Source: Asterias rubens
Taxonomy: Eukaryota
DNA: 64,000 nucleotides
Direction of reading: 5' to 3'
Assembly: GCF_902459465.1 (NCBI RefSeq)
Contig: NW_022985694.1
Span: forward strand, 1 to 64,000
The notes beneath the pieces were generated by a model, which was given only the letters and a program-made list of their open reading frames with translations, was not told where the DNA came from and did not search any database. Positions within the stretch are counted from its first letter, which is position 1; the number at the start of each line of letters is the position of its first letter. This document shows positions 3,101-51,975 of the stretch, piece after piece. A program made the position numbers and the translations under genes.

Positions 3101-6100
3101 TTTTGGTCTGTGTTTTCAGGAATTGTATAGTAAGGACAAACATTTTGTCATCAATTTGTAGAAGGTATATGAATTAACAACATTTCAGCAAGCACATTTC
3201 AACAAACAGGAACAAGCATGTTTATGACTTATTGGCTGGCCTTGCTCATGCAAGACTTATTTTACTGTCATGAACATGTAATTTCTTTTAAACCTCATTA
3301 GTTTTTAAGTTTTGACTGCCCCAAAAACACTCTGGGTTGAGAATTTTGATTAAGCAGCATTTGAAAACTTTATTTTGTTATTTCTGTCATCCCTTTCCAG
3401 GCCATTCTGTCATTCTTGGTTACGTAAATCTAACACTTTTCAAATGACACTGTAACTTTTCAAATAAATTTATATTCTTTTCTTTTTATTTTAAAACCTT
3501 TTTGGAGCACGTATCAATCATGAACATCATTCTTGTCATTTGAACATGTTTCTCTTTTTCACAAAATTGGTGTGAAGGTTCCCATATCCATGTTGTCATT
3601 AACAAAATCCAACTTTATATTCGAATGGCCTTATAGACATGTACTTACTTTTTTCCATGATGGGAAATCAAGTAGCTCACTAATATCCTGACTAGTTGAT
3701 GCCTGACTTTTTTCGTCAAGAATCCAGATTGCTCGATGCTCCGAGTGACACTCTTTCCTTCTGGAGATTCACTAAGAATCTTCTTGGTATCCTGTTGAAC
3801 AGTGATATATATGAAGATTGGATATAATTGCTATAGTCTTTTACAGATTGGTATGCAAGGTAAACCGTTGTACACACTGAAAAAGGTGAGGAGTCCTTCA
3901 AATTTATCTTAATTGCTTTCATACATATCATTTCAAAATTGTCCCTTTCCCAAGGCCCCTATGTTTTCCCAATGGAATTCGGTCACCTTTTTAAAACTGA
4001 GAATGTCGGGGGGTTTACCCATACAAGTTGTGCATTGTCCTAAGGAAACTGTGTGTGGTAAAGATGGTAATATGTCTCTTTATACATTATGGGTAAGGAA
4101 GGGATACACAAAATATGCAAATATCAATGTTCAAGTCTACCATTGGTATACTTATAATTCCACACAACGGCATAGATGTAGGGTGATTATTCAATAATTG
4201 GGAACCCTTTCTTGTCTTCACTTTTCTTGTGCGACTTCATGAAGCTCAATCATCTTTTAGCAAAGCTGCTGTAAAACTATTAAAACAAAATCAGCAAACA
4301 ACCATTGAGCTACACACAATGAAAAACAGAAGCTCTATCTGCATAAAAATTAAAGATAATTAAGTTTAAAACAAACGTCTTACTTACAAACAAAAGTCTC
4401 TTCTGTCTTTTCATGGGTGGGGGTGACATCTGTGACAATGGAAAAAGCCCAACTGTCCGAGTCTGACAAAGAGGCTGCACTGGAAACATCCCCTGTTACT
4501 GGTGTGCCTAACACAGGTGCAACTTCACTGAAGTCCGAACTGGAACTCAGCATTGACTGACAATCAAAGAAGCCGTTTCCGGTCCAAAGTCAAGCATATC
4601 CCTTGGTAGCTGAATTGGTATTGCTGTTACCCGAGGTCCAAACTGTACAACAAACAAAAAGGGGCTAGATTAAATATAGATTACTTACTAAATTACCACT
4701 ACTCCTTCTGCCAGATGAAATTGGAATTGTCTCAAAGAAAAGCATAGAAAAGCAAAAATAACCATGCTTCTTACAGTAGTCTGTTTTATGTTTCCTAGTG
4801 AGGAAAAAAAGTAATAATAATGGTTCTGTATTAAACATACCAGTACAGTATCATCATACAAGGTTGAATGGTGTTATGATGTACCACGAAGAGTCGTCCT
4901 TACCACTGCACTTAGTTGCATGGAATGGTCTGCACACGAGAAGTTCTTTGGGCTGTTTGATGAAAACACTTTCAGACTCTTCCACAGCATAAGAGTGTCT
5001 ATGCCTGTTGTAATACTTGGTATGCCATGACCGTAGGACAAAGTAGATACTGCTCTCAACTATTATGATATGCTTTACTTGTGAGAATTGTGGCTCTTTG
5101 GCAGTCCAGTCAACCAGAATCATGCAGTTTGGTTTGTATGTATGTCTGAATGGAAACACTTCCTGACAAAATGACTTGAGCATCTTTTCCACACCCAAGG
5201 AAGGAACACACATCATTCACTTCATCCAGAGAAGAAACCAGAACAGAAATCTGATCCCTTACTTCTAATTCACTGTTCAATGGCTTCCTCAGTAAGAAAG
5301 TATAGCTTTGTTGCTGCTGATGCCTGATACTGACTGTCTTTGCAACATTCTTGTAATTGTTACAAGCTCTAGCCCACCTTTTAAAAGGTTTGTGCTTGCC
5401 CTCTTTGCGCATACTTGAGTACTGTTCCAGAGGTCCAAGAAGTTGTATTACCCGAGGGTAGTGGATTAAAAAATGCTGTTTCGGGATAAGGTGACGGTCT
5501 TGAAAGAGGCTCAGAAAGAGCCGATGATGGTCTGCAATCAAAGCTTTCAAAATGTATACGCCTGCATGGCTAATGCGTGGAGCTACTACGATTTTATATA
5601 TGTCAAGCAGCAACAGGAACATCTCCCACACATCAGATTCCTCATCTACCAAGTCACCAATGATCAAGGGAAGATACAAAGCTAAGATTCTTGTCTGTGC
5701 AGCCTTCTGACCACTTGAACCTGATGGATTCCTGAGTGCTGAATCCTGAATTATACTTGGTTTACTTTTTTTATCCGCAAACCCATAGCCAAATGAAGAA
5801 ATGCGATTGTTTACTTCTTCAAGAGTAAAACATCCTTCCAATGAGCTCACCAAGAGTAAGTTTTATTTCAAGTGGGAAAATACCCTCAAGTAAGTCATGC
5901 ATTACATCATGTTACATGATTGTCGGTGACATGGAAGCCAGTCAACTTATTCAGTTCAGAAGACCGTTTGATCCCTGTCTTTGAGACATTGTCCAACACA
6001 AGGTCCGCTTCAAAGCTGTTTTTGTCTCTTAAAAGTGACACATCTTCTACAAGTTGCTTTTTAGTGATCTCCTTTGGTGCCTTGCAAAACCGACAAGGAT

Positions 6101-7444
6101 AGTTAGCACTGAAGCTACCTACAAAACCGAGTGTTTCATGAAGCCCTAAGTTGTCACCTATCACCTGAAAAACAACTGGTCTTACCAAGCCTGAATAGGA
6201 TTGACAAGAAACTTCTATTCCCTGTCTTTCGATATCATTCAGGTCTTTCACAATCACTGATAGTATGCTGTCAATGCCATATTTGGCAACTTCAGATCTT
6301 TTTGCACACGCTGCCAATAAAATGTTACTAAGAGAAGCCTGGAACTGAGCAGGCAGACAAAGCAGACTAATATAAAGCCAGTGAGTTATTTATTCCTTTT
6401 TTAGAACCGAGGGGGTTCCCTGTTTCATAATCATCACAATACAATAGAATAGGGATGACAACATCGGCACTTGCAGAAAATTTACCCTTAAAGTAACTTC
6501 CATCGCGATAGGACTGTAACACAAGCCATCCTCACAGGGTTTTGATGAAGAATTGCAGCCATCACTCCTGGCTGCTCCAGATGTTTCCTGAGTGTTTTCT
6601 TCATGGGAACATATTGGAAGCTGTCATTTTTTACTTTCTGTTTTACTCCTCCAGTTGAGGTATCACTCTGTGATGTGAATGACTGACCCAGCACCCTTTC
6701 CTCTGGGCTGATGAAATATCCCTTATCTTTGAAGTATTTGTCCTGTTGGTACTGTGATCGAAGGCCTTCAAAGGTTTTTTTTACAACCTCACATTCTTGA
6801 AAAACTGTTTCAAATTTTGAGAGATTTGCCTCCTTGAACTGTGTTTGAACCTCTTCCACAATAGAGGAAAGCTTATGCTGTAGATGATTAGCAATGATCT
6901 CCACCAGCCCTTCAACTTCATATATGATCTGTTGCACATTGGATATGGTATAGCAGTTGCTTTCATGTTCGCTACAAAATAAGAAACTGCTTCAGCAAGG
7001 GTATCTTTGCATGTTTGTCGATCTTCATCCAAACTTTCATTATCTTGCACGTCCATTCCTTCATATCCACCACGCCATGCTCATTTTCTGATTCTTCACC
7101 TTGGGTATGTTCTTGCATGTCTGCATGCTTTGCCAATATGACGTCGATAACGATAATGAGAAAATGCCAAACAGCCATCTTGTCTACATATGACAAATGT
7201 TGATGCACCAGAATGTAAACTATGGATGTATTTTAGGTGATTGAAAAGACCCTTAATTCCCCCATGGACTTCAGATAAGCACTTGTAGCACAACATAGTT
7301 TCTTCTTACAATACTAAAAAGGCAAACAACTCACTTGCTTTTTCCACTTTGCCAAGAACTTAACTCGCAACCCAACTTTTGGAATTAGCGGTGTAATGTC
7401 CTCTTCTCTTAACAGCTCCAAGGCTTCTATATCTATTGCATTAT
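187..7444 (-). pseudogene. Mirror-image copy of the element A SAM-domain accessory gene (exons on the minus strand; last exon falls outside the window)
   Basis: Reverse complement of exons 9713-17011. The SAM exon is at 7335-7444, the EAFYTKGSKGCPAGGYLEEHLRY exon is in ORF 2182..2418, and the DEKINLSFFV exon is at 187-308. Confidence 0.85.
4854..7296 (-). pseudogene. Mirror-image copy of the element A EnSpm-type transposase, broken by several small indels
   Basis: ORFs 7096..7296, 6781..7056, 6488..6937, 5907..6317, 5110..5853 and 4854..5216 are consecutive pieces of the protein encoded from 9861. Confidence 0.93.
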
Positions 7445-8699
7445 CTGTGTGAAAAATGAATAAAACATAACTGATACTAAATTTTCTACTCAGAATGTTT
7501 TACTAGTTACAAAAATGTAAATACATTAAGAAGAGTTTTCTCAAGTGCTGGGGTTATGAAAACAGCTGAATGTTTTTGTGTACTATAACATGTCCTAGTG
7601 ATTTAATTTAATTGTTTTAATTTAGTATGAGGCACTTAAACTTAAAATTGAGCAAAATGATCATGACACACAACTGCTATACAGTGTTAGTAACTATAAT
7701 AAAACAGTGCAGTCAATAGGCCTAAGGCCTAGTAAGTCCTAAATTGTAAATGGTAAAAATTCTATCTCAAAAACACAAAGTCTCAACGACTATGTTGACG
7801 CGGCACCAGACTAACATTTTTCTAGGTAGGTGCTACAATTTTAAGTCCCAAAAGACAGTCACTGCCCATGTTCAGAAAGCCCCAGTAAAAATAACGTAAA
7901 ATATATGCTACATGTACAGTGCAAAACTGCAAGTACATGTACAAAACTACAAGAATACCAGTGCCAATATATTATACCAGTGCCAACACATCTACTGCTA
8001 AGTAAAATAGACACTACACATTAGAAAATGTAAAAACATGGACAGTTCTTTAAAAAGTTTAACTTAAAGTTGCATAAAATAGATGCCATGCAATGTTTTT
8101 TTGCCCAACCAGTAATACTTTTGCAGGAACCCTACTCAAAAGTTGGGCATGACTAAATTTGGCATGTTTAAAATAAATTCACTTAAATTTGCATAAAGAC
8201 ATGTCATGCAATGTTTTTTGCCCAACTATATTACTATTGCAGGAACCCTACTCAAAAGTTGGGCATGATGGGTTTGACAATGCCCAACCTTTATTGGAAG
8301 AAATATCCCACTCAAACATTGGGTATTACGCATATTACAATAACCCAACTAATGAAAGAAACTAGGACTTTTGCCTAAAAGTTGAACGTTAGTAGCTCTA
8401 ACATTGCTCAAAAGTTGGACAGCAAGGCTTAACTTACATGACATGAGTTATGGCAAGTTGTCTGCTGGAAATTGTAAAAAAAAAATTAAAAGCAAAAAAG
8501 CAAAACACAAAGGATGAAACCGACAAAAAATGTATGCGTTTGTTAAAAATATGGTATGGCGTTTTTTTGCTTGTTTGTTTGGTAGATATTTGGTTCAGTT
8601 GTATGTGTGTGTGTGGTTTTTTGTCGGTTTTCATCCTTTTGTTTTTGCTTTTTTGCTTTTAATTTTTTTTTTTACAATTTCCAGCAGACAACTTGCCAT

Positions 8700-9110
8700 A
8701 ACTCATGTCATGTAAGTTAAGCCTTGCTGTCCAACTTTTGAGCAATGTTAGAGCTACTAACGTTCAACTTTTAGGCAAAAGTCCTAGTTTCTTTCATTAG
8801 TTGGGTTATTGTAATATGCGTAATACCCAATGTTTGAGTGGGATATTTCTTCCAATAAAGGTTGGGCATTGTCAACACCCATCATGCCCAACTTTTGAGT
8901 AGGGTTCCTGCAATAGTAATACTAGTTGGGCAAAAAACATTGCATGACATGTCATTTATGCAAATTTAAGTTGAATTTTATTTTAAACATGCCAAATTTA
9001 GTCATGCCCAACTTTTGAGTAGGGTTCCTGCAAAAGTATTACTGGTTGGGCAAAAAACATTGCATGGCATCTATTTTATGCAACTTTAAGTTAAACTTTT
9101 TAAAGAACTG
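8700..9110 (+). repeat. Left subterminal repeats of element A (~120-bp duplicated unit, core catgcccaacttttgagtagggttcctgcaa)
   Basis: The core occurs at ~8883 and ~9003, with further ccaacttt copies at ~8730 and ~8765. Confidence 0.7.
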
Positions 9111-9712
9111 TCCATGTTTTTACATTTTCTAATGTGTAGTGTCTATTTTTACTTAGCAGTAGATGTGTTGGCACTGGTATAATATATTGGCACTGGTATT
9201 CTTGTAGTTTTTGTACATGTACTTGCAGTTTTGCACTGTACATGTAGCATATATTTTACGTTATTTTTACTGGGGCTTTCTGAACATGGGCAGTGACTGT
9301 CTTTTGGGACTTAAAAATTGTAGCACCTACCTAGAAAAATGTTAGTCTGGTGCCGCGTCAACATAGTCGTTGAGACTTTGTGTTTTTGAGATAGAATTTT
9401 TACCATTTTACAATTTAGGACTTACTAGGCCTTAGGCCTATTGACTGCACTGTTTTATTATAGTTACTAACACTGTATAGCAGTTGTGTGTCATGATCAT
9501 TTTGCTCAATTTTAAGTTTAAGTGCCTCATACTAAATTAAAACAATTAAATTAAATCACTAGGACATGTTATAGTACACAAAAACATTCAGCTGTTTTCA
9601 TAACCCCAGCACTTGAGAAAACTCTTCTTAATGTATTTACATTTTTGTAACTAGTAAAACATTCTGAGTAGAAAATTTAGTATCAGTTATGTTTTATTCA
9701 TTTTTCACACAG

Positions 9713-12700
9713 ATAATGCAATAGATATAGAAGCCTTGGAGCTGTTAAGAGAAGAGGACATTACACCGCTAATTCCAAAAGTTGGGTTGCGAGTTAAGTT
9801 CTTGGCAAAGTGGAAAAAGCAAGTGAGTTGTTTGCCTTTTTAGTATTGTAAGAAGAAACTATGTTGTGCTACAAGTGCTTATCTGAAGTCCATGGGGGAA
9901 TTAAGGGTCTTTTCAATCACCTAAAATACATCCATAGTTTACATTCTGGTGCATCAACATTTGTCATATGTAGACAAGATGGCTGTTTGGCATCATTTTC
10001 TCATTTATCGTCATATCGACGTCATATCTTGGCAAAGCATGCAGACATGCAAGAACATACCCAAGGTGAAGAATCAGAAAATGAGCATGGCGCTGGTGGA
10101 TATGAAGGAATGGACGTGCAAGATAATGAAAGTTTGGATGAAGATCGACAAACATGCAAAGATACCCTTGCTGAAGCAGTTTCTTATTTTGTAGCGAACA
10201 TGAAAGCAACTGCTATACCATATTCCAATGTGCAACAGATCATATATGAAGTTGAAGGGCTGGTGGAGATCATTGCTAATCATCTACAGCATAAGCTTTC
10301 CTCTATTGTGGAAGAGGTTCAAACACAGTTCAAGGAGGCAAATCTCTCAAAATTTGAAACAGTTTTTCAAGAATGTGAGGTTGTAAAAAAAACCTTTGAA
10401 GGCCTTCGATCACAGTACCAACAGGACAAATACTTCAAAGATAAGGGATATTTCATCAGCCCAGAGGAAAGGGTGCTGGGTCAGTCATTCACATCACAGA
10501 GTGATACCTCAACTGGAGGAGTAAAACAGAAAGTAAAAAATGACAGCTTCCAATATGTTCCCATGAAGAAAACACTCAGGAAACATCTGGAGCAGCCAGG
10601 AGTGATGGCTGCAATTCTTCATCAACAACCCTGTGAGGATGGCTTGTTGTTACAGTCCTATCGCGATGGAAGTTACTTTAAGGGTAAATTTTCTGCAAGT
10701 GCCGATGTTGTCATCCCTATTCTATTGTATTGTGATGATTATGAAACAGGGAACCCCCTCGGTTCTAAAAAAGGAATAAATAAACTCACTGGCTTTTATA
10801 TTAGTCTGCTTTGTCTGCCTGCTCAGTTCCAGGCTTCTCTTAGTAACATTTTATTGGCAGCGTGTGCAAAAAGATCTGAAGTTGCCAAATATGGCATTGA
10901 CAGCATACTATCAGTGATTGTGAAAGACCTGAATGATATCGAAAGACAGGGAATAGAAGTTTCTTGTCAATCCTATTCAGGCTTGGTAAGACCAGTTGTT
11001 TTTCAGGTGATAGGTGACAACTTAGGGCTTCATGAAACACTCGGTTTTGTAGGTAGCTTCAGTGCTAACTATCCTTGTCGGTTTTGCAAGGCACCAAAGG
11101 AGATCACTAAAAAGCAACTTGTAGAAGATGTGTCACTTTTAAGAGACAAAAACAGCTTTGAAGCGGACCTTGTGTTGGACAATGTCTCAAAGACAGGGAT
11201 CAAACGGTCTTCTGAACTGAATAAGTTGACTGGCTTCCATGTCACCGACAATCATGTAACTGATGTAATGCATGACTTACTTGAGGGTATTTTCCCACTT
11301 GAAATAAAACTTACTCTTGGTGAGCTCATTGATGAAGGATGTTTTACTCTTGAAGAAGTAAACAATCGCATTTCTTCATTTGGCTATGGGTTTGCGGATA
11401 AAAAAAGTAAACCAAGTATAATTCAGGATTCAGCACTCAGGAATCCATCAGGTTCAAGTGGTCAGAAGGCTGCACAGACAAGAATCTTAGCTTTGTATCT
11501 TCCCTTGATCATTGGTGACTTGGTAGATGAGGAATCTGATGTGTGGGAGATGTTCCTGTTGCTGCTTGACATATATAAAATCGTAGTAGCTCCACGCATT
11601 AGCCATGCAGGCGTATACATTTTGAAAGCTTTGATTGCAGACCATCATCGGCTCTTTCTGAGCCTCTTTCAAGACCGTCACCTTATCCCGAAACAGCATT
11701 TTTTAATCCACTACCCTCGGGTAATACAACTTCTTGGACCTCTGGAACAGTACTCAAGTATGCGCAAAGAGGGCAAGCACAAACCTTTTAAAAGGTGGGC
11801 TAGAGCTTGTAACAATTACAAGAATGTTGCAAAGACAGTCAGTATCAGGCATCAGCAGCAACAAAGCTATACTTTCTTACTGAGGAAGCCATTGAACAGT
11901 GAATTAGAAGTAAGGGATCAGATTTCTGTTCTGGTTTCTTCTCTGGATGAAGTGAATGTGTGTTCCTTCCTTGGGTGTGGAAAAGATGCTCAAGTCATTT
12001 TGTCAGGAAGTGTTTCCATTCAGACATACACATACAAACCAAACTGCATGATTCTGGTTGACTGGACTGCCAAAGAGCCACAATTCTCACAAGTAAAGCA
12101 TCATAATAGTTGAGAGCAGTATCTACTTTGTCCTACGGTCATGGCATACCAAGTATTACAACAGGCATAGACACTCTTATGCTGTGGAAGAGTCTGAAAG
12201 TGTTTTCATCAAACAGCCCAAAGAACTTCTCGTGTGCAGACCATTCCATGCAACTAAGTGCAGTGGTAAGGACGACTCTTCGTGGTACATCATAACACCA
12301 TTCAACCTTGTATGATGATACTGTACTGGTATGTTTAATACAGAACCATTATTATTACTTTTTTTCCTCACTAGGAAACATAAAACAGACTACTGTAAGA
12401 AGCATGGTTATTCTTTGCTTTTCTATGCTTTTCTTTGAGACAATTCCAATTTCATCTGGCAGAAGGAGTAGTGGTAATTTAGTAAGTAATCATATATTTA
12501 ATCTAGCCCCTTTTTGTATTTTGTTGTACAGTTTGGACCTCGGGTAACAGCAATACCAATTCAGCTACCAAGGGATATGCTTGACTTTGGACCGGAAACG
12601 GCTTCTTTTGATTGTCAGTCAATGCTGAGTTCCAGTTCGGACTTCAGTGAAGTTGCACCTGTGTTAGGCACACCAGTAACAGGGGATGTTTCCAGTGCAG

Positions 12701-31730: not shown

Positions 31731-34700
31731 GTAAGAACAATTGATTTTATGTGCATTTTCCCCTGTATTTTGTTACAATAATGTAGTTGTACCTTGTAGC
31801 TCTAGTGTAGATGATTCTTCCTCCGTGACTAGTTTATATTTCTATCTTCTCCATGTTTTTTGTTTCATTTCTGATAAACTAATTCGAATTTAAAACTTGA
31901 CATTGGTGGTTATGGTGGGCCGGACTGAGCAATGACATACACTACGTACAGTTGGCTGCTTGTATAGGATGATACATATACTAAACATGTACTTTTCTTG
32001 TTTTACTGACATTTAAAATTACTTTTAAGACTTACTGAATCTGTTAATTTATCAACATGCCTGTATGATATCGTCAGTCGGATTATTGACCTCTTCATCA
32101 CACTCACATTTCACAAAATTGAACAATAACTAGGCTAAGTATAAGTGAGTTAGTTTTACTTTCACAATTATGAATATGGGTTGAATTTAAATATTTTGAG
32201 TTGTGCTTAATGACAAAGTTAAGTAAAATTAACGTGGACAATAAGTGAGTTAGTTTTACTTTCACACTTTTGTGAATATGGGTTTGAATTTAAGTATTTT
32301 GAGTTGTGCTTAATGACAAAGTTCAGTAAAGTTAATGTTGACAAAAGGTGAGTTAGTTTTACTTTCACACTGTCAAAGTGTGAAAGACAAACTAACTCAT
32401 TGGGCATTGCTCCTATAAATTATGTATTGTAATTCAATGAAGTAGTTTATTCAGTCAGAGAATAGCAATTCTGCATGTCATAATATTTTCAAAGTTTGTG
32501 TGCGCATTCCCACTGACATTTGAGCAGCAAAAAGTTTTTTTTTAATTGTTGGATCTCATGTTTCATAGAATTAGCTAGATTTTTGTAATACGTGTTCTGG
32601 TATTTCATGGTTTTGTTTTCTGCAGTACGTGGTTATGTGGAAATGTAAGGACTGCATCTTTCAAACTCGAAGGAAGTCAACATTATATAAACACTACAAG
32701 CTTCAGCACGGTCATTATGGTCCAAGTAATCCCCAACCATGTTTGTACAATGACTGTCCATGCAGATTTAAAACAAGTGCAGCCTTACAAACACATATGT
32801 CGAGATATCACTTGCAAGATGAATGTATTCAAAAACCCAATTGCTTTTAAATGTCATGTGTGTGAGAAGAATGATATTACCACAGAAAAAACATTCTTTG
32901 ACCATTTACATAAACATTTAAAGAATAATGAAACTGTTGTTTGTGCGTTTCACGGTTGTAGTTTTACAACAAATGTGAGTGGCACATTCAGATCCCATAA
33001 GAGTAGAACACACACACCACACACTCTGGCAGACTTCAAAATTAAGATTGTACAGCATCCAGGATGCCACACTGATGTTGATTCACAAGACACATGCTTT
33101 CCCAGAGAGTTACATGTAGAAGATGTTAAAGAAGGTGAAGACTTGTATGCAGAAGACAATTCTGAAGACCTTCATGTAAATCGATCCACACAAGCCATTG
33201 AACGAACATTTGCAGCGCTTTTACTAAAACTGGAGAACATACTTCATGTATCAAGTAAAGCAGTTGACGAGTTGGTCACTGAGTTGGAATTTATTATCAC
33301 CTCTGTTTCTACGCTTGACATACAAGGCATACTCGAAGAAACCTTGAAAAAACATAACTGTAATATTGACAAAGCTGTCATTGAAGAATTAGCAAATTCA
33401 GTTAATGCGACTAATCCCATCATCACGGCAATTGGAAAGGATGGTCCTCTTGCAACTGCATATAAAAGGAAAGAGTATTATAGAAAACACTTCAGTGTTG
33501 TACAGCCTGTTGAATACATACTCAATGCAAAGGAAAACATTACCTATCAGTATGTTCCGATTCTGCAATCATTGCAACAAGTACTAAATGTAAATGAAAT
33601 CCTCGATAAAGTGCTGAATATTGATGAAAGTGGACAAAATGAAGCTGTTGATGATATGCCACAATATAAATCATTTCGGGATGGAAATTTCTTCAAAGAA
33701 AATAGGCTTTTGTCTGGAGAAGAGTTTCAAATTTTTGTTGGCCTTTATGTAGATGATTTTGAAGTGTGTAATCCCCTGGGCACGTCAAAAAAGAAACACA
33801 AAGTTTGTGCAGTGTATTGGGTCTTGTCAGATTTGCCACTCAAGTACCGTTCTTCTTTGACTTCAATTAATCTAGCCGTTTTGTGTAAAAGTGTCGATGT
33901 GAAGAAGTATGGATTCAGTCAAGTTTTGGAACCACTTATAAAGGATCTTGTCACCTTAGAAACAAATGGTGTCTTTATTTCAAAATTGGGAAAACATATA
34001 AAGGGCACTGTTCAGTGTGTGGCAGCAGACAATCTAGGAGCCCATAGTCTTGCCGGATTTGTTGAAAGCTTTTCTGGTCATTATGTCTGCAGATTTTGCA
34101 CAGGAAAACACAGTGACTTTCAGTCGAAGGAAGTTAGATCTGGTGCCTTCCAGTTGCGAACTAAAGGAGAGCATTCTGAACATGTTAAAACTTCACTGGA
34201 GGATGAAGCCATGAACAATTGCTATGGAGTAAAACGTGACTGTGCCTTGACTAAAAAACTCAGTAACTTCCATGTCTTGACAGGCTATCCTCCTGATGTA
34301 TTACACGATATTTTTGAAGGAATTGTTCCAGTTGAACTTGCACGCTGCCTCCGTGTACTTATCTCCAAGAACTACTTCACACTTGATGAACTGAATGATG
34401 TGATCAAGCACTTCCCCTACAAATGGGCTGATAAAAGAAACTCTCCACAGCTTATTCCTGACAAATTTTTAACCACAATCCATGGTAACGCACATGAGAA
34501 CTGGGCCTTGCTAAGATTACTTCCTTTTTTTGTTGGAACTAGGATACCCCATGGGGAGCCAGCATGGGAGATCTTAATGGATTTGAAAGATATAGTTGAA
34601 CTAGTTGTGGCACCTGTTCACACTGAAGAATCCATTGCATTTCTAGATTGCAAAATTTCTGAGCACCGCCAGAAATTTCAAGTAGTTTTCCCTGATGTAA

Positions 34701-43633: not shown

Positions 43634-44646
43634 TTAAAGTGATGTAAAATTAAGGTTGAGCAAGCTGGATATCTATACCCAATGCTAGGACCTAAAGTTG
43701 ATTTCTCTGCACTTTTTAAGGATTTTTTTAAAGGTCAACTAAATGGGTCCTTAGCTTAAAGATTATTGTTTGTAAATAGTAACCTGCAATAGGTCTCTTT
43801 GCTAGAGACACCTTATTGCAGTACATTATATTTTATTATTCCACTAATTTTACTCGCTTAACAAAGACTAAAACAAAAATACATCTTTCGGGGGAGGGTG
43901 TGTTAACTTAAAATTTATTTTTTTAAAAGAATAGTCCAAAAAAGTCTGATCTTATAAATGCATCCTAAACCTGTTTGATATAGCTTGTCAGCCAGATGCT
44001 TTTTCTTCATAAGTTCTTTCTGAAAAATCTGTACTTTAGTTATGCTCCACACCGTCAAGAGAATATTGTTTTGAAGATTATGACCACTTGGCAAACAAAT
44101 ACTGTATTTAATAACTTCCGTGTCAGATAATTAAGACGTTAACAAATGAAAGTTGTATCATAAACACAAATAAAAATTGATACAACAAAGCAAGGTGTTT
44201 TTTATGTGATTATGCTATGAAGTTAAAGGGTCTGGGTACTTTTTGTATGATACAAAACACAATCTGATAATGATGAACTGGTCAGTGACTGCAAAGTTGA
44301 CATGAATGACATCTCTGACCACGGTGTTGTAAACTGCAAACTTCACTTCATTAAACCTCAACCCATGCTCATGGCATCAAAGTTCCGTGATTTTCGTAAG
44401 ATTGACCATGATGCTTTTGCTCGTGAACTAACAGAACGTCTCCACGATGTCACCTGCGAAGGCGACGTTGACACGGCAGTCTTGGAATTTAACTCCGCAG
44501 TAAACTGTGCTCTAGACATCCATGCACCGTTGTTGACTCCTAAACCAAAGCCCAAACGTGCTAAACCAAGATGGTACAACAACGATGTTGAGGACGCGAG
44601 ACGCGGACGTCGTCAAGCGGAACGCAAGTGGCGAAAGTCCAGACTA

Positions 44647-47600
44647 CACGGCTGTTTCACGTCTAAAAAAGTACGCCCTCTGTTGGTCAGATTGGGCCAA
44701 CGCCTAAAACCCTATTCGTGACGTCATGATGGCTTTGCGGCTATTCATGAATGAGCGTTTGACCCCTTTTTGTTTGTGGGTTTTTGATTGGACAGTTAAT
44801 AAAATTTGCATAATTTCTGAGGACAATTTAATGAATATTCAATTATAAACATGAATAAACAGTTTTTAAAGACGGTGACCTTTGTTTACTTATAGAACTG
44901 GGTGGGCATTTAGGTACATGTGACCGCGTTGTACGTAAAAGCCGAAACCCGCAATTTCCCACTAATATAATGCCGTTTTTCAACATTGTTCGACAATTCT
45001 ACGAAAAAAATATGTCTACATATGGTTGGATAACGTTTTCAAGAGTCATTTTATCCCAAAGGTAAGAAAGGGCCAACATAAATACCGATGATTACGGATG
45101 ATTGAAAATGGTCATATTATTTTTAGTTTCGTGAATCACATAATAACAACACGTACAAAACGCACGTTTTGTGTGTGTACACAGTGATGCGGTACACGCT
45201 GTACGTAGCTTTTCGTGTATGTACATGTGCAATGTACGTGTAGTTAATACATGGGGTGGGTTTTTAATGCATGGGTTTATGCATGCTTCATGAGCCCAGA
45301 CAGTCACAATACGGGCATGTTTATATTTTCAGAGTCTTTGTCCCTCTCTGCTCTGATCTTTCTTATGACCTTGCCCACATTATATTGATATTCACCTTCA
45401 TTCAACCAACATCGATTTAAATACAGTTTGGATTTATTTTAAAATTATGAATTGCATAGGCCTACTGTACTATTTTATAATTATTATAAAGTTTTCTGAA
45501 TTTAAATAATGTTATGAAATAATAAAGTAGGGTAGGGAGGGTAGGGGCCTAGAAATTGCAATTGATAAGAGGTAATAAAGAAAAGGACACATTGCATTGG
45601 TGAAGGCGGTCAAATTTTATTTTAATTAAGAAAAAAGGGCCTCCGAAAAAAAACATGAATAATTTTTTAGATCATTTAAAAACAACGCTGGTATTTATTT
45701 ATATATATGTACAAACAATTATCTTATGTTTTCATTTTTATGCGAAGGGGCATATAGTGTTTGCCTTGTTAGTGTTATTTATGGCACATTCAATTTCAAT
45801 TCATCATTTGCTTCGAGCATACTACTTTATATATTTCTATTTCTTCATTTCTGCATGCACTTCTGGAAAGGTGGTCGTCAGATGTCGTCGCATGATACTC
45901 ATTAGCTTCTGGAGCTCATCCTTCATGCCGTGCACTGCTCGTCCAGCTCTGTTGAACTCGGTGTGCAAAAGCTCACCGCCTTGCTCATTCAGTAGCCCCA
46001 GACCAACCTTGAATCGCCGCAGCTGCTCCATGGTATGCTCCTCTAGCATATGCAGCTTAGGTGTAATGCTGGCATCAGGGAAGCATCGACGATACACACG
46101 TAAGAAGTGTTTAATGCACACGTCTAATAAAAAAGATGAAAATTGTGTGCATTTGTAAAATAATGCTAAGTGATCTTTTTATTTAGGTGTTTTTTTTGTT
46201 TTATTTTTAATTATTGAAGTGCTATTGAAATTTATAAGCCTGTTGATTCTTACCTGTTCGCTCCATGTCTGATTGCGTGATAGGGTTGCAGTGGTTTATG
46301 GCTTTGTGCACATCTGCGAAACAAGAAAACGCTTCATGGAATTTAACACCAATTTCTGCCGAATTCCTTCTTATTGTGGCAGATGCTTCAAGAGTCAATT
46401 CATCGAGTGGGAGTTGGTCGGTCATCAGTCGAGGTTGAGACGTGAGGGCATCTATAACGGGTATCTGTGAAGGACATGATAGCAGTACATAAGGTTGAAG
46501 CTAAAAGGTACCAAGTTCATTAAAATTGCTTAAAAACGGAAGTTTAATCAAATTTGATTAAAATGATTTTTGCAATTATTTCACTGAGAGGGTTATGGTA
46601 ATACCTGACAACACTTGTTAACGTGGTTTCCCACGAAAGACTTCCCATGGTAAGCCTGTCTGTTCACTTTATGTTTTTTCAGCACACCGTCCAAACTACT
46701 GGCAATTGGCCCTGTACCAAACTCCAGTTCAGTCGTCCCCTGGTTGTTTTCCTAAAAAAATAAAAATAATAATAATTATTATTTATTCATTGGCTCACAA
46801 GTTAAATCACAATGACAGAGAAATATAGATTTACAAACCATTTCAGCAATGTCTGCCCTCAATACGTTGACTCCATGATGGTTGTCTAGAAGGGGAAGGG
46901 GAATGTCCTCTTCGAGGTCTTCAAGTTGATCTCGCTTTTCTTGAAGATCTCTTTTGATTGTCCTCTTCCTGCACAGCTCGTTCTCAACTTTCTTGTCAAA
47001 GTCGGTCGTTGAATCGTCCTCAAAGTCGTCATCAATATCTCTGGCAATGGCTCTCTCTTTCAGGATGGCTACATCTAGCTCATGGCACGCTTGCTCGAAG
47101 AGGTCATACAACCTTTTAAACACTCCAAGGGATATGTGGAGTGTAGGGACGATCACCTATATCAATTTTGGGAAAAAGGGTAAGTGTTTTTTGCAAGTAA
47201 TTAAACAAAAAAAATTCTTAAGCACATTTTGTAAATTGATTTTACATTGAAACTACAAGTATAAACTTACATAATCAAGCTCAACAGGGAGCATAGGAGA
47301 GCTCACTATGCTAAATGACACATCCTTGGCCCTGCTTCTCTTCTGCCCATCTTCAACAAAGAGCTGATGCTGCTCCTTGATCGACTGCAGTGACCTTCTA
47401 AATGACGCTTGTCGCTCGCATAGTGGTCGCTGCATATTACTCTTGCTTATTCTGCAGTAAATGCAGCAATATCGGGCTGAAGAGAAAAATATAATAAAAA
47501 GAAAAGAATGGAATGAATGGATGAATGGAATTGTATGACATTCTGCATGTTTGAAAATTAAATCTTTGTGCTATAGCGTTTACATGTCATGGGCACAGTA

Positions 47601-50417
47601 TACATACCATTAGAGCTGCATACTCCATACAGCTTTGTGAGGAACGCATAATCGCCAAAGCTAAAAAGACGAAATTTATGCCCTCTGGAAATAGATAAAT
47701 CAAACAAAGTTTTGTTAAAAATACTAATTATAAAGGTCACTCTGGTTGAATGAATCCTGTTTTTATAATTATTAGTATCAAATAATTATAACTACCTCCA
47801 TTCCAGATTGGCAAGATCACTGATTTGGTCGATTACACGAGGAAGAGTTTTCATCAGGTTGTAGTAGCTGTCATCTCCACAAAAGCATGCACAAGTGACT
47901 GTGTTCTTTAAGCTGTTGGGATGAACTACATTGATGATTTGGAAGGCCATTTTGAACGATGATCCACCCTTGTCCCCGCCGAACTTCACCCATATTTCAT
48001 TATCCGGGATTACGCCGTTATGCCACGTGAGTGAGTTTGTCCTGTTTAAATTGAAGAAAAAGTCAGTAATTATAGACAATACTAACAGCATCTTATTAAT
48101 AATGATGTTTTTATTTATTTAAATAATACTTACAGATCCAGTCGGTCAAGGTAGTCGAAGATCATGGTGCAAACATCATTTATTCTGAAAAAAGGGTGCA
48201 TCTTGAAGAATATAACCAGCAATTGCATCTGCTTTGGAGCTCGAAAATTGCAGAGCAACCATTTCACCCTCAACATAATTCTTCAGAAGTTCTTTCTGGC
48301 TACGTCGCATGGCTCTTTCGGAAGAAATTGTTGGAGTCGGCATGTAGCTGAAAAAAGGGTAATATAACATATGGCATGATGAAATACATGTACTGAACAA
48401 CTTTTTATGATATATTAAATATTGCCATTTGTTTTCAAAGTTAGTTCTGATATGTACATACCGTCGTATTTTCCGCACTTGGTCCCATGCCAAATGAGCA
48501 TCTCGCATCATAGCTAGGGCCTTGTTGGGTGGCATTGGGGAAGTTTCCTTTTCACATGAACTTTGCGTTTCATCTTGTTTCGTGCTAGAAACCTGGCGTA
48601 TTTGAGCAGGCTGTGTAAAAAGGAATAAATATTAGTTTTCATTATCTATCGTAGCATTGTTTCATTGACATTAAAACAATTCCTTGACAGTGACACCAAT
48701 TTATAAAACGCTGAGGATTTGTTAATGTAAATACTTACCCTGCCTCCTGTTTCTAACGTGGCAACCTTTCCTCTCTGGTTCAACTTGATCCAGGTCCAGC
48801 GATCAGCTGCCTTCTCAACTGCCAGGGGAATTGGCCGCCCAGGGGGATGCGACAGGGCACTCTTGCGGAGGATAGCAGCAGCTTCAGCGAGACTATCCTC
48901 GGGACTAGTTGGGGCGACACTCTCTACGACAGTGCATCGTCGGTGTTTACTTTGTGGGTCATTCAACTTCGGTGATGCATGACACGAATGGGCTGCTAGG
49001 CTTTGCAGTCGACCAATGACCCCACAGAGACCACAAGCTACATCCAAGTTTTGAAGCTGTACGTTCAAAATTCGTGGACTTTCTCGAATATCAGTGAACT
49101 GAATTTGTGACATGCAAGATGGACATTTGAGTAGAGTTGATCGATTAAATTTGAAATATGAGGACAAACAAACTGCACAAAAATAATGCTCACAGGGTGT
49201 TTGCACTGAGGGTTTTGAAATAATACACTGACAAATTGAGCAAATAAAGACAGAATGTTCATCAGCTTTCCTTCCAAATACTTCTAAATTTGGAGAACTT
49301 TCGAGCAGAACGTCTTGGGTTGTCTGGGATAGGTGCTCAAATATGTTGCTCGAAGAGATGTTAAAAGGAAGTTCTACCACGGCAGATATCGGCTTGGTAG
49401 CAGCCCTACTTTTAGGTTGCGGTCCAGTTTTAGAATTAGTGTGGTACAAATCGCAGATTTTACACCGTTTATTTCTTGTATGTTTTGTCCAGTCAACTGC
49501 TGGTGTATCTGGAGTTTTGTAGTCCCTAGTCCCTGCCTGTAAATGTCTTACTTTTCTCGAACAGTTTAAACAAATATACCTTGGGTGCGTATCACTACTG
49601 TCCTCCCAAGTGTTTACTCCAAAAATCAGAGAAATTTCTTTTCTACAGCTTGAAGCCTCTACTAGTTTCCTAGTATCCTGGGCTTTGTGTGTTAGCCTTT
49701 TTCCACAACAACGGCACAATTTACGAAGAATATTTAAATGGAAATCATAGCTGCTCATTATTCAACGTGTATAAAACATGCATAGACGGCTGCTGTGAAG
49801 CACCTCAAATAATGCCTATTCGTTTGTACACGGAAAACTTTTTTTCATTTCCGCGGGCTTTCTGTGACGTCACTCGTATTGACTAACACACAACGTTCAC
49901 ACAGCCCGTACGTTCATTTCAGAAGCCGGCGTACAAAGTTCCCCAAAACAAATGCCTATAAGTCTCTAAAACTTTCTGGCCCAGATTTGTAACCTAAATT
50001 TTAATAAAGATATGATTGTAAATATTTGTAATCACGTTTGTGTATATCTGTATAATTGGAGAGGAATTTGTTTTCGACGTTTTTCTGAAGTGTTTATGTA
50101 ATGAGAGAATACAATAAAATAACACAAAAAGTTACACAAAAGACGTAAGATTTTCCGTTTATTTTATTTAAAACATTTTAATCATCAGAAACTTATCAAA
50201 TATAATATAACTAAGAAAAAACATTATATTCCTGGTGATGAAAGTTACACAGTATTTGAAAAAAAATGGTGAAAAACGATCGTCCGATCGTGTAATTTTT
50301 CACGTTTATGGGGGCCGCCATCTTGGTTTTGGTTCGTGCGTTACTGGAGTAAACAAACACCACCGTGCGTTTGTTAATACTTTTTTACGCACGGTCTATG
50401 GGAGCGGAACAGCCGTG
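44647..50417 (-). mobile_element. Chapaev-type DNA transposon (RAG1/Transib-related transposase), 5,771 bp, with a 4-bp TSD
   Basis: ACTA|CACGGCTGTT at 44647 and AACAGCCGTG|ACTA at 50417 give a 10-bp perfect TIR and an ACTA TSD. Removing the element and one TSD copy restores the LINE reading frame. Confidence 0.92.
45837..49758 (-). CDS. 10-exon Chapaev/RAG1-like transposase (~957 aa): Chapa zinc module, RING finger, GGRP motif and RAG1-core-like DDE domain; one extra T near 48190
   Basis: Minus-strand exons 49758-48739, 48610-48462, 48347-48134, 48041-47796, 47684-47608, 47476-47271, 47156-46839, 46751-46605, 46464-46254 and 46123-45837, all GT-AG and phase-compatible. Motifs H-x7-CRCCG..D-x4-H-x4-C-x2-C..W..C-x2-C; RING CSICQC..PCEHYFCAVC..CPSC; GGR|PAQ; KFGGDKGG; FGDY; CCIYC; LHISLG; FVGNH; TPKLHMLEEH..LNEQGGELLH. 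Confidence 0.88.
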
Positions 50418-51975
50418 ACTACCCAGTGACCACACGAACTACGAACAATCCAAACGCAAACTTGCAGAAGTGCTTGTCAAAGCTAAATCTGTCTTCTATA
50501 GAGAGTCGTTGATAGGATCCAGTCCAAATGAAGTCTTCCGAATCGTCAATAACCTCACTGGTAAACCCCGGTTAACCCCATCAATCCAGGACTCGCCCAC
50601 AGTTCTTGCTCAAGCTTTCAGTACATTTTTCACTGACAGAATTAAAAATATCCGAGCTCATATGGATGACGTTCAACTTGATCCAACTTCATCGGCTAAT
50701 ATGCATACATGCCCCCCAAGTGCTCAGTTCATGCATTTCATGCCGATCACCGAAGATTACCTTCATAAAGTGATCAATAACTCAGCGACAAAATCATGCC
50801 AGCTCGACATAGTTCCAACTTGGACATTCAAAAAGCATACGGCTACATTCTTACCGAAGCTAACGGAGATTGTAAATACCTCACTGACATCAGGTGTTTT
50901 CCCAGAACTATTCAAACAGGCCGTCATCACTCCTAGCCTGAAAAAACAATCTCTTACTAAAGAAGTACTCAAAAATTATCGCCCCATTTCTAATCTCCAG
51001 TACCTAGCCAAACTTTTGGAAAAGATCGCCTGTGAACAACTATCCCGACATATTGTTCAACATCAGCTAGCAGAGCCTCTACAGTCAGCATACAGGCCCA
51101 ATCACAGCACCGAGACTGCTCTGCTTCATGTACAAAATGACATCCTTAGAGCAATCAACAAAAACAATGCCATTTTCATGGTCATGCTGGACCTCTCCGC
51201 CGCCTTCGATACCCTAGACCACCAAACCCTCCTGCAACGCTTCCATGACAGATTTGGTATAACCAACACAGCGCTCGACTGGTTCACGTCATACTTCAAC
51301 AATCGCAAGAGTCGGGTTATCCTACCTGGCGGTGTCACCTCCGATGAAACTGTTCTTCGTTTCGGTGTCCCACAAGGATCTGTTATAGGTCCTCAGGCTT
51401 TCACCATGTACCTGTCCCCAATCGGTCATCTTCTTCGTCAGCATGAGGTCAAGTTTCACATGTATGCAGATGACATCCAAATCTACGTAGAATTTGACCC
51501 CAAAATCCCCAATGATGCAGAATGTGGGCTGTTCAAGCTCTCGAAGTGCATCAGTGACGTTCAACACTGGATGTCAAGCAACAAGCTTCAGCTAAATGGA
51601 GAGAAAACTGAATTTTTCATTGCCTCTTCAAGCTGTAACTACAAACATCTTGCCCATCTGACTCTCACTATAAACAACAGCACACTCCACCCATCAACTT
51701 CCATCCGGAATCTTGGTGTTGTCTTTGACAATACTATGTCGATGAGTGATCATTTCACATCAGTCTGCAAATCAGCTAACTACCACCTCCGTAATATCGG
51801 TAGAATCCGAAAGTACATTGACGCTGAAGCCTGTCACGCCACTGTTAGGGCACTTGTACTCTCCAGATTGGACTACTGCAACTCTTTGTTAAGTGGTTTC
51901 AAGCAATCTGATTTAGGCAAGTTACAAAAGATACAAAACAGAGCATCCCGTATCATCTTCTCCTACCCATTGTAG

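What the first reader, a model, noticed from the sequence alone, without database searches (positions are those of the whole stretch)
44647..50417. RSS-like asymmetric bipartite ends (heptamer, 10/23-bp spacer, A-tract 10-mer) on a RAG1-related Chapaev transposon
Seen: both ends start CACGGCT and both carry the identical 10-mer TAAAAAAGTA further in. It lies 10 bp after the heptamer at the left end (44664-44673) and 23 bp after it at the right end (50378-50387, reverse strand). Beyond the first 10 bp the two ends are otherwise dissimilar. Established: V(D)J RSSs are a CAC heptamer, a 12/23 spacer and an A-tract nonamer bound by the GGRP-containing nonamer-binding domain of RAG1; Transib and ProtoRAG TIRs are also bipartite and asymmetric. 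Inference: this element's transposase has GGRP at the matching position and may enforce a 10/23-type pairing rule without RAG2. I do not know whether this has been described for Chapaev ends.
Basis: partly seen in the sequence, partly recalled or inferred. Interest (0 to 1): 0.85.

Follow-up and report, generated by a model that had tools for sequence, protein, structure and literature searches.

The report
Chapaev transposon with unequal bipartite ends
A young sea-star jumping gene of the RAG1-related Chapaev group carries the same two recognition blocks at both ends, set 13 bases further apart at the end next to the gene's start; a second sea-star species keeps this layout, which resembles the 12/23 signals of antibody-gene assembly but is not shown to follow their rule.

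Summary
Element 44647-50417 (5,771 bp) has a 4-bp target duplication (ACTA). Both ends start CACGGCT and carry TAAAAAAGTA, 10 bp in at the left end and 23 bp in at the right end. Removing the element restores a LINE reading frame. Other contigs show the same ends in different flanks, so the family moved recently.

A complete related element in Patiria miniata has an 11/24 layout with the same polarity: the long spacer lies at the transposase 5' end. Only its exons and terminal 40-44 bp align with this element. Four further families keep heptamer, 22-23 bp, TAAWAAAGTW-like block at the gene-proximal end.

The protein argument is weaker. GG(R/Q)P is conserved, but in a modelled relative RAG1's GGRPR superposes about 10 residues further on, on a KPRK motif. 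This family lacks that stretch. The window copy also has a frameshift in exon 3.

No pairing rule is shown. Asymmetric heptamer/A-rich ends without RAG2 are already published for some Transibs and for PflRAGL-A, so this is a new member of a known kind. Two other stretches of this genome were given the same reading earlier in this scan (s1-150105, s1-150155).

The parts
44643..44646 (.). Left copy of the 4-bp target-site duplication, ACTA
   Evidence: Removing the element plus one ACTA restores the LINE ORF. Empty-site joint skipping 5,775 bases.
44647..50417 (-). Whole Chapaev-type DNA transposon, 5,771 bp, with the transposase on the minus strand
44647..44653 (+). Heptamer CACGGCT of the gene-distal (3') end, the presumed cleavage site
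   Evidence: Loose ends with other flanks begin exactly at 44647 in runs X1 and X18.
44654..44663 (+). Short spacer, 10 bp
   Evidence: The Patiria relative has 11 bp here.
44664..44673 (+). Subterminal 10-mer TAAAAAAGTA at the distal end
   Evidence: Patiria has TAATAAAGTG at the matching place.
44674..44685 (+). Block CGCCCTCTGTTG after the distal 10-mer, identical in the Patiria element. It is the inner part of the 44-bp conserved distal terminus.
   Evidence: Derivatives in X1 and X18 share the end only up to 44681.
50411..50417 (-). Heptamer CACGGCT of the gene-proximal (5') end
   Evidence: Three other copies have different flanks at this base.
50388..50410 (-). Long spacer, 23 bp
   Evidence: Spacers of 22-24 bp in five other families.
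50378..50387 (-). Subterminal 10-mer TAAAAAAGTA at the proximal end
50418..50421 (.). Right copy of the target-site duplication, ACTA
45840..49758 (-). Transposase gene of 10 exons: 49758-48739, 48610-48462, 48347-48134, 48041-47796, 47684-47608, 47476-47271, 47156-46839, 46751-46605, 46464-46254 and 46123-45840. In the window copy it is broken by one frameshift in exon 3, near 48187.
   Evidence: Spliced contig in run X18. Splice sites. Frames. Copies L001 and L002 lack the extra base.
48608..48747 (-). GGRP motif formed by splicing: GGR is encoded by 48747-48739 and P by 48610-48608, with intron 1 between them
   Evidence: The exon 1 end T-G-G-(R/Q) is conserved in 12 relatives.
50314..50349 (-). 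Further blocks at the proximal end that recur in several relatives: CTCCAGTAACG (50349-50339) and AAGATGGCGGC (50324-50314). They look like promoter elements.
   Evidence: alignment of ends read by eye. Function inferred only.
44302..51975 (+). Host LINE ORF interrupted by the insertion (44302-44646 and 50422-51975)

Best explanation
This is a recently mobile Chapaev-clade cut-and-paste transposon. The clade belongs to the Transib/RAG1 superfamily. Each end has two parts: the terminal heptamer CACGGCT, where the RAG1-fold DDE transposase cuts, and an A-rich block TAAWAAAGTW. The block lies 10-11 bp from the heptamer at the gene-distal end and 22-24 bp from it at the gene-proximal end. The A-rich block is most likely a second contact point for the transposase. 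The unequal spacing probably marks the two ends as different, so that a complex of one short and one long end is the normal substrate. Shown here: the anatomy, the exact boundaries, recent mobility, conservation of block and spacing across families, and the RAG1-like fold of a relative. Inferred: binding of the block by the transposase, which part of the protein does it, and any preference for a short/long pair.
For: Boundaries and 4-bp duplication. Recent mobility: copies 99.6-99.7% identical in three other flanks, loose ends at both termini, a spliced transcript contig, and RNA runs that hold exon 1. Conservation: the Patiria miniata element L035:5075-12423 has the duplication AGCT, CACGGCT-11-TAATAAAGTG at the distal end and CACGGCT-24-TTATAAAGTC at the proximal end. 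Between the two elements only the exons and the terminal 40 and 44 bp align, at 84-85% identity. The proximal ends of L004, L006, L007 and L032 carry a CACGG heptamer, 22-23 bp, then TATAGAAAGTA, TAATAAAGTT, TAATAAAGTA or TATCGAAGTT. Their spacer sequences differ, and exon 1 is only 35-37% identical in L006, L007 and the L032 family. The strict two-block pattern matched nowhere else in the window or in 31 loci. Derivative elements share only the outer 34-60 bp of the ends. Fold: a model of relative P0031 matches the RAG1 core at Z 25-26, ahead of HzTransib (Z 24.2) and BbRAGL (Z 23.7).
Against: Both ends are known for only two families, and their termini are 84-85% identical, so these are not independent samples of the short-spacer end. 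A candidate distal end in a more distant family (L036:3930) has no clear 10-mer. No distal end was found in L032 or L007. The proximal block also resembles a TATA box. The spacing difference is 13 bp, not a clean helical turn. The window family lacks the stretch that superposes on the start of RAG1's nonamer-binding domain. No binding or cleavage data exist.
Confidence: 0.55

Rival explanations
1. The A-rich block is a core-promoter element (TATA-like) for the transposase gene. It is conserved at the proximal end for transcription, not for transposition. The distal copy is a by-product or drives an inward antisense transcript.
For: The proximal versions read like TATA boxes (TTATAAAGT in Patiria, TATAGAAAG in L004). 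The block faces into the element on the transposase sense strand. Other blocks that look like promoter elements follow it in several relatives (CTCCAGTAAYG, AAGATGGCGGC).
Against: The same block lies in inverted orientation in the distal end of both families with known distal ends. There it sits inside the only conserved non-coding stretch of that end. Its distance from the terminus is fixed to within 1 bp in six families: the AAAGT/GAAGT core starts at base 34-36. A promoter element would not need that. The distance to the next conserved block varies (block start at base 69-75).
Confidence: 0.15
2. The asymmetry is a tolerated historical accident. A 13-bp insertion entered one arm of a once symmetric inverted repeat and was inherited by the sea-star families. 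The transposase is indifferent to spacer length.
For: The two ends align over about 17 bp and again at the 10-mer, with 13 extra bases at the right end. The two families with both ends known share ancestry in their termini.
Against: The long spacing (22-24 bp) is kept in six families whose spacer sequences have diverged. The short spacing and its polarity are kept between two elements whose other non-coding DNA no longer aligns. Two other reports of this scan describe 10-bp asymmetries in further families of this genome. I did not check them.
Confidence: 0.15
3. The shared 10-mer is a chance match in A/T-rich DNA.
For: A/T-rich 10-mers are not rare. A dinucleotide-shuffled window holds the 10-mer at least twice in 13 of 100 shuffles.
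Against: Both copies sit within 40 bp of the termini. The chance that two such ends share a 10-mer is about 0.3%. The block recurs at the same offset in five other families.
Confidence: 0.03

Closest known systems
Transib terminal inverted repeats and V(D)J recombination signal sequences (Kapitonov & Jurka 2005, PMC1131882; Yakovenko et al. 2021, PMC8355894)
   Same: A CAC-initiated heptamer (CACGG as in many Transibs), a spacer, and an A-rich block. Total lengths are 40 bp (7+23+10) and 27 bp (7+10+10), against 39 and 28 for RSS23 and RSS12. Some Transibs (Transib5 of D. melanogaster; Transib2 and N1-N3 of A. gambiae) have 12/23 ends without any RAG2.
   Different: The duplication is 4 bp, not 5 bp. 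The block is TAAWAAAGTW, not AAAAAAATC or ACAAAAACC. The spacer difference is 13 bp. The transposase carries the Chapa and RING N-terminal region and has many introns. Its core is only remotely similar in sequence.
PflRAGL-A transposon of Ptychodera flava (bioRxiv 10.1101/2023.08.20.553239)
   Same: The ends have a heptamer, a conserved stretch next to it, an asymmetric spacer (10 bp difference) and an A/T-rich nonamer-like block. The authors link this to a GRPR/K-type nonamer-binding domain.
   Different: PflRAGL-A encodes RAG2L and makes 5-bp duplications. Here there is no RAG2-like gene, and the stretch that corresponds to the GRPR position is missing from this family's transposase.
Chapaev transposons (Kapitonov & Jurka 2007, Repbase Reports; Kapitonov & Koonin 2015, PMC4411706)
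   Same: Chapa zinc domain plus RING, a DUF1280/RAG1-like core, CAC termini and short duplications. This element is a member.
   Different: I found no open paper that describes Chapaev ends as two blocks with unequal spacers. The Repbase Reports could not be read here.
Drosophila P element ends (PMC7776569)
   Same: A 10-bp internal transposase-binding site lies at unequal distances (9 and 21 bp) from the terminal repeat at the two ends. Its authors note that this is reminiscent of 12/23.
   Different: The transposase is unrelated in its DNA-binding part (THAP domain). The terminal repeats are 31 bp and the duplication is 8 bp. The P transposase core matches the model only weakly (Z 11.9).
Amphioxus ProtoRAG (BbRAGL-B)
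   Same: RAG1-fold transposase (Z 23.7), a CAC heptamer, and 5' and 3' ends that are not identical.
   Different: According to the papers read, ProtoRAG ends are nearly equal in length, have no A-rich nonamer-like block, and rely on TR2 and a C-terminal clamp.

Membership tests
Chapaev clade of the Transib/CMC transposon superfamily | [quoted passage not shown] | tested here: met
   zf-C3HC4 at E 2e-5 and RAG1_imp_bd at E 1.7e-3 (below Pfam's cut-off) in exon 1. Relative P0031 aligns to mouse RAG1 residues 141-374 at E 4e-6.
Chapaev clade of the Transib/CMC transposon superfamily | DDE transposase core of the DUF1280 / RAG1-like fold | tested here: met
   PF06918 at E 3e-18 on the exon at 48118-47795. 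The motifs GGDKGG, FGDYAF and NEQGGE are present in the reading frames. A model of relative P0031 matches the RAG1 core at Z 25-26. The window protein itself was not modelled.
Chapaev clade of the Transib/CMC transposon superfamily | Termini starting with CAC and a short target duplication (2-4 bp in CMC) | tested here: met
   CACGGCT at both ends. 4-bp duplication ACTA here and AGCT in Patiria. The 2-4 bp range is taken from bioRxiv 10.64898/2026.08.26.747230.
RSS-like 12/23 signal pair | CAC heptamer at the cleavage site plus an A-rich second block conserved in relatives | tested here: met
   CACGG plus a TAAWAAAGTW-like block in six families.
RSS-like 12/23 signal pair | Two spacer classes, one at each end, differing by about one helical turn | tested here: met
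   10/23 here and 11/24 in Patiria, with the same polarity. The difference is 13 bp rather than 11. Both ends are known for only two related families.
RSS-like 12/23 signal pair | Spacer length conserved while spacer sequence is free | tested here: inconclusive
   The long spacer is 20 of 23 identical between the window and Patiria. It is largely different in L006, L007 and L032 although its length stays 22-23 bp.
RSS-like 12/23 signal pair | Cleavage or synapsis requires one short and one long signal (the rule itself) | not testable with these tools
   Needs cleavage or excision assays, or a census of mobilised derivatives with both ends.
RAG1-type nonamer-binding domain with a GRPR/K motif | GRPR/K motif at the start of a three-helix domain immediately before the DDBD/core | tested here: not met
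   In the relative's model RAG1 389 superposes on residue 350, on a KPRK motif, not on TGGQP at 339-343. The window and L005 families lack about 37 residues that include this motif and the first basic helix. GGRP itself is present just before the gap.
RAG1-type nonamer-binding domain with a GRPR/K motif | Sequence or fold similarity of the domain itself to the RAG1 nonamer-binding domain | tested here: inconclusive
   A profile of the region finds no RAG1 chain at E up to 10. The isolated-domain model (pLDDT 84.5) has no Foldseek match below E 3. Whole-protein alignments do run through RAG1 389-460 in order. The RAG1 domain is an intertwined dimer, so a monomer model may not match it.

The most novel reading that the evidence does not exclude
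Chapaev transposases, which have no RAG2 partner and in this family have a much reduced nonamer-binding region, nevertheless require one short-spacer and one long-spacer end for synapsis. A 12/23-type rule would then be an ancestral property of the whole RAG1/Transib/Chapaev superfamily, and not something added with RAG2 or with the GRPR-type domain.
Probability: 0.25. Interest if true: 0.8.

Novelty: new member of a known kind. Interest (0 to 1): 0.5.

Why it matters
How the 12/23 asymmetry of antibody-gene signals arose is still debated. The competing views are the Transib-seed and RAGL-A hypotheses (PMC8355894; bioRxiv 10.1101/2023.08.20.553239). This finding adds a third clade of the same superfamily whose ends have a conserved, polar short/long layout. 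It sits in a family that is young, transcribed and multi-copy in sea stars, so the rule can be tested in a natural system without RAG2. If the asymmetry is functional, it is older or arises more readily than thought. If it is not, it warns against reading RSS-like spacing as evidence of a pairing rule.

Tried and rejected
1. Five of twelve contig look-ups for relatives (P0002, P0004, P0151, P0088; P0170; P0175) returned no DNA because the sample files were too large. P0234 was not on record.
2. L007 (7.3 kb) ends before the gene does. L032 (11.3 kb) has 2.3 kb after the last exon, but no second end was found by heptamer, repeat or motif searches.
3. L036 gave a candidate distal end, CACGGGTGTTTCA at 3930(-). 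It has no clear 10-mer and no second copy to confirm the boundary. I left it as inconclusive.
4. L037 (Amphiura filiformis, 102 kb) holds only N-terminal Chapa/RING fragments and no full element.
5. Scans of viral contigs and of prokaryote genome contigs found no relatives.
6. Sequence profile and isolated-domain fold searches for a RAG1-type nonamer-binding domain found nothing.
7. I considered that L004's block structure was a spliced retro-copy. I rejected this because its block edges do not coincide with the exon edges seen in run X18. It is an internally deleted copy.
8. I read the X19 joint 44645 to 50426 with CGCCC between the two sides as a diverged LINE copy, not as an excision footprint.
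Full report
**Observation.** The coordinates are exact. CACGGCT lies at 44647-44653 on the plus strand and at 50417-50411 on the minus strand. TAAAAAAGTA follows after 10 bp at the left end (44664-44673) and after 23 bp at the right end (50387-50378). The 10-mer occurs nowhere else in the window. Two 80-bp ends share a 10-mer beyond their first 10 nt in 0.3% of shuffles. The right end then has 13 extra bases before the 10-mer.

**Boundaries and mobility.**
- The element is flanked by a duplicated ACTA. Deleting the element and one ACTA restores an uninterrupted LINE reading frame (…RKWRKSRLPSDHTNYEQ…).
- Contigs of three public runs join 44641 to 50417, skipping 5,775 bases. That is the element plus the 4-bp duplication.
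- Three metagenome contigs carry copies 99.6-99.7% identical to the window. Their similarity to the window stops exactly at 50417, and two of them (L002, L003) continue into different flanks.
- Loose ends with other flanks begin at 44647 and at 50417.
- The family therefore moved recently, making 4-bp duplications with no obvious target consensus.

**The gene.**
- The transposase lies on the minus strand in ten exons. A contig of run X18 matches six of them with no mismatches and with the introns removed. GT-AG sites fix the junctions.
- Exon 1 has a C3HC4 RING and a weak match to the RAG1 N-terminal family. A later exon matches DUF1280.
- RNA-labelled runs, including starfish RNA-seq, hold exon 1.
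- The window copy has one extra base and two substitutions near 48187 in exon 3, compared with L001, L002 and the contigs of X1 and X18. This gives a stop at codon 447.
- Exons 4-10 stay open in the shifted frame, and the summed exon length is 3n+1.
- This copy is therefore defective but has intact ends. Other copies are intact at that site.

**Conservation of the ends.** A search of 1.8 billion representative proteins with exon 1 gave many relatives, and DNA could be fetched for some.
- The most useful is L035 from the Patiria miniata assembly (GCA_015706575.1). It holds a complete 7,349-bp element (5075-12423) flanked by AGCT on both sides.
- Its gene-proximal end reads CACGGCT, 24 bp, TTATAAAGTC. 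Its gene-distal end reads CACGGCT, 11 bp, TAATAAAGTG, then CGCCCTCTGTTG.
- The polarity is the same as in the window, and the AAAGT core is again 13 bp further in at the proximal end.
- Between the two elements only the exons (70-81% identity) and the terminal 40 bp (proximal) and 44 bp (distal) align, at 84-85%. The 660-bp leader, the introns and the 1.2-1.8 kb trailer do not align. So the termini are under constraint, and at the proximal end the constrained stretch stops right after the A-rich block.
- Four further families supply proximal ends: L004 (83% identical in exon 1), L006 and L007 (35%), and L032-L034 (about 37%, with the boundary confirmed by different flanks).
- These ends read CACGGCT-23-TATAGAAAGTA, CACGGCA-23-TAATAAAGTT, CACGGTA-22-TAATAAAGTA and CACGGCG-22-TATCGAAGTT. 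Their spacers are largely different, and all lie 525-771 bp upstream of the start codon, as here.
- The AAAGT/GAAGT core starts at base 34-36 from the terminus in all six families.
- The strict two-block pattern matched nowhere else in the window or in 31 loci.
- Derivative elements seen as loose ends share only the outer 35 bp of the left end and 34-60 bp of the right end.

**Limits of the conservation evidence.**
- The short-spacer end is documented in only two families, and their termini are clearly related.
- L007 ends before the gene does. L032 shows no second end within 2.3 kb.
- A candidate distal end in the more distant L036 shares CACGGnTGTTTCA but has no clear block.
- Two other reports of this scan describe 12/22 and 9/19 layouts in other Chapaev families of this genome, one of them across seven families. 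They agree with this reading, but I could not check them.

**The protein argument.**
- GGRP is real but is created by splicing: exon 1 ends …TGGR and exon 2 begins P….
- T-G-G-(R/Q) at the exon end is conserved in twelve relatives. The consensus of 32 full-length intron-less relatives is KTGGQP. The arginine is therefore specific to the sea-star subgroup.
- An AlphaFold model of relative P0031 (pLDDT 86) matches RAG1 core structures best (Foldseek E 6e-15; Z 25-26). HzTransib (Z 24.2) and BbRAGL (Z 23.7) come next.
- Model residues 414-984 lie on RAG1 460-1007. Chains that include the nonamer-binding domain extend the alignment, with model residue 350 paired to RAG1 residue 389.
- TGGQP is at 339-343. 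RAG1's GGRPR therefore superposes about ten residues further on, on a conserved KPRK motif that precedes a basic helix with invariant arginines.
- Patiria, L007 and L032 encode that stretch. The window family and the 51%-identical L005 family do not: their exon 2 runs from PAQIRQV / PVHIRQV almost straight to the ALAMMRD helix, which corresponds to the start of RAG1's next domain. About 37 residues are missing.
- A profile of the region finds no RAG1 chain. The isolated-domain model is a hairpin with GGQP in the turn plus three helices, and it has no significant structural match.
- In short, "GGRP at the matching position" holds only approximately, and a RAG1-type nonamer-binding domain is not demonstrated for this family. 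An AT-hook-like role of GGRP at the A-tract remains possible but is pure inference.

**Interpretation.**
- The best-supported reading is a bipartite end. The heptamer is the cleavage site. The A-rich block is a second recognition point whose distance from the tip differs between the ends in a conserved, polar way.
- The main rival is a TATA-like promoter element at the proximal end. It is weakened by the inverted copy in the conserved distal terminus and by the fixed distance from the tip. It is not excluded.
- A neutral 13-bp insertion is made unlikely by the maintenance of both spacings while surrounding DNA diverged.
- Whether a short/long pair is required cannot be told from sequence.

**Comparison with known systems.**
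- Kapitonov and Jurka (PMC1131882) described Transib ends as heptamer, 23-bp spacer and A-rich nonamer, with some families 12/23-like.
- Yakovenko et al. (PMC8355894) list those families.
- Martin et al. (bioRxiv 10.1101/2023.08.20.553239) describe PflRAGL-A ends with a 10-bp asymmetry and an A/T-rich block, together with a GRPR/K domain.
- Kapitonov and Koonin (PMC4411706) place Chapaev inside the Transib superfamily and describe its Chapa and RING domains.
- P elements show an analogous 9/21 spacing of a 10-bp binding site (PMC7776569).
- I found no open paper that describes Chapaev ends in this way. The Repbase Reports were not readable here.
- The finding is thus a new member of a known kind: expected in outline, new in detail, and useful because the family looks active.

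Noticed in passing
window 48180-48195 (exon 3, minus strand): The window copy differs from L001, L002 and the contigs of X1 and X18 by one extra base and two substitutions. This shifts the frame and gives a stop at codon 447. The rest of the gene stays open in the shifted frame.
   Followed up: yes
window 48462-48610 (exon 2); L005:1380-1510; L035:7270-7530: The window family and the 51%-identical L005 family share a short exon 2. It lacks about 37 residues (a KPxK motif plus a basic helix) that Patiria, L007, L032 and the intron-less relatives have. At least one short-form family is recently mobile, so either the stretch is dispensable or these elements are moved by a relative's enzyme.
   Followed up: partly
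window 50339-50349 and 50314-50324 (minus strand); window 44719-44726: The proximal end carries the blocks CTCCAGTAACG and AAGATGGCGGC (YY1-like), which recur in several relatives. The distal end carries a TGACGTCA palindrome (CRE-like), also present in Patiria's distal end. Both ends may hold promoter elements.
   Followed up: no
window 50361-50376 and 50350-50360 (minus strand): Just inside the proximal 10-mer lie AACAAAC and GTTTGTT, a small inverted repeat, around a second heptamer-like CACGGTG. A TTTGTTTG-like block recurs after the 10-mer in L006, L007 and L032.
   Followed up: no
L004:198-2728: This copy of a sister family (82% DNA identity) has several internal deletions relative to the window element, and its 10-mer is altered to TATAGAAAGTA. 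It is a non-autonomous derivative that keeps the 23-bp spacing.
   Followed up: partly
L037:28329-28508 and 31970-32150 (Amphiura filiformis): A 180-bp unit, present twice, has near-symmetric inverted ends: CACAG(C/T)A, 25-26 bp, TTAAAA(A)GTT. It lies in a locus with three Chapa/RING gene fragments and no transposase core. Its boundaries and any link to Chapaev are unverified.
   Followed up: no
proteins P0002, P0005, P0006 and the consensus of alignment A2, about residue 115: Most relatives have a canonical AT-hook/NLS-like GGRPxKR motif after the Chapa zinc domain. In the window protein it has decayed to TGPQPK. It is a second candidate for A-tract contact or nuclear import.
   Followed up: no
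window 44302-44646 and 50422-51975: The host is a LINE with an open ORF across the restored empty site. Empty copies of it are abundant in the runs examined.
   Followed up: partly
run X6 (organism B), contig on window 44647-45006: A diverged copy has no difference in the first 119 bp of the left end and 13 differences in the next 241 bp. This fits constraint on the terminus, but it is a single contig.
   Followed up: no
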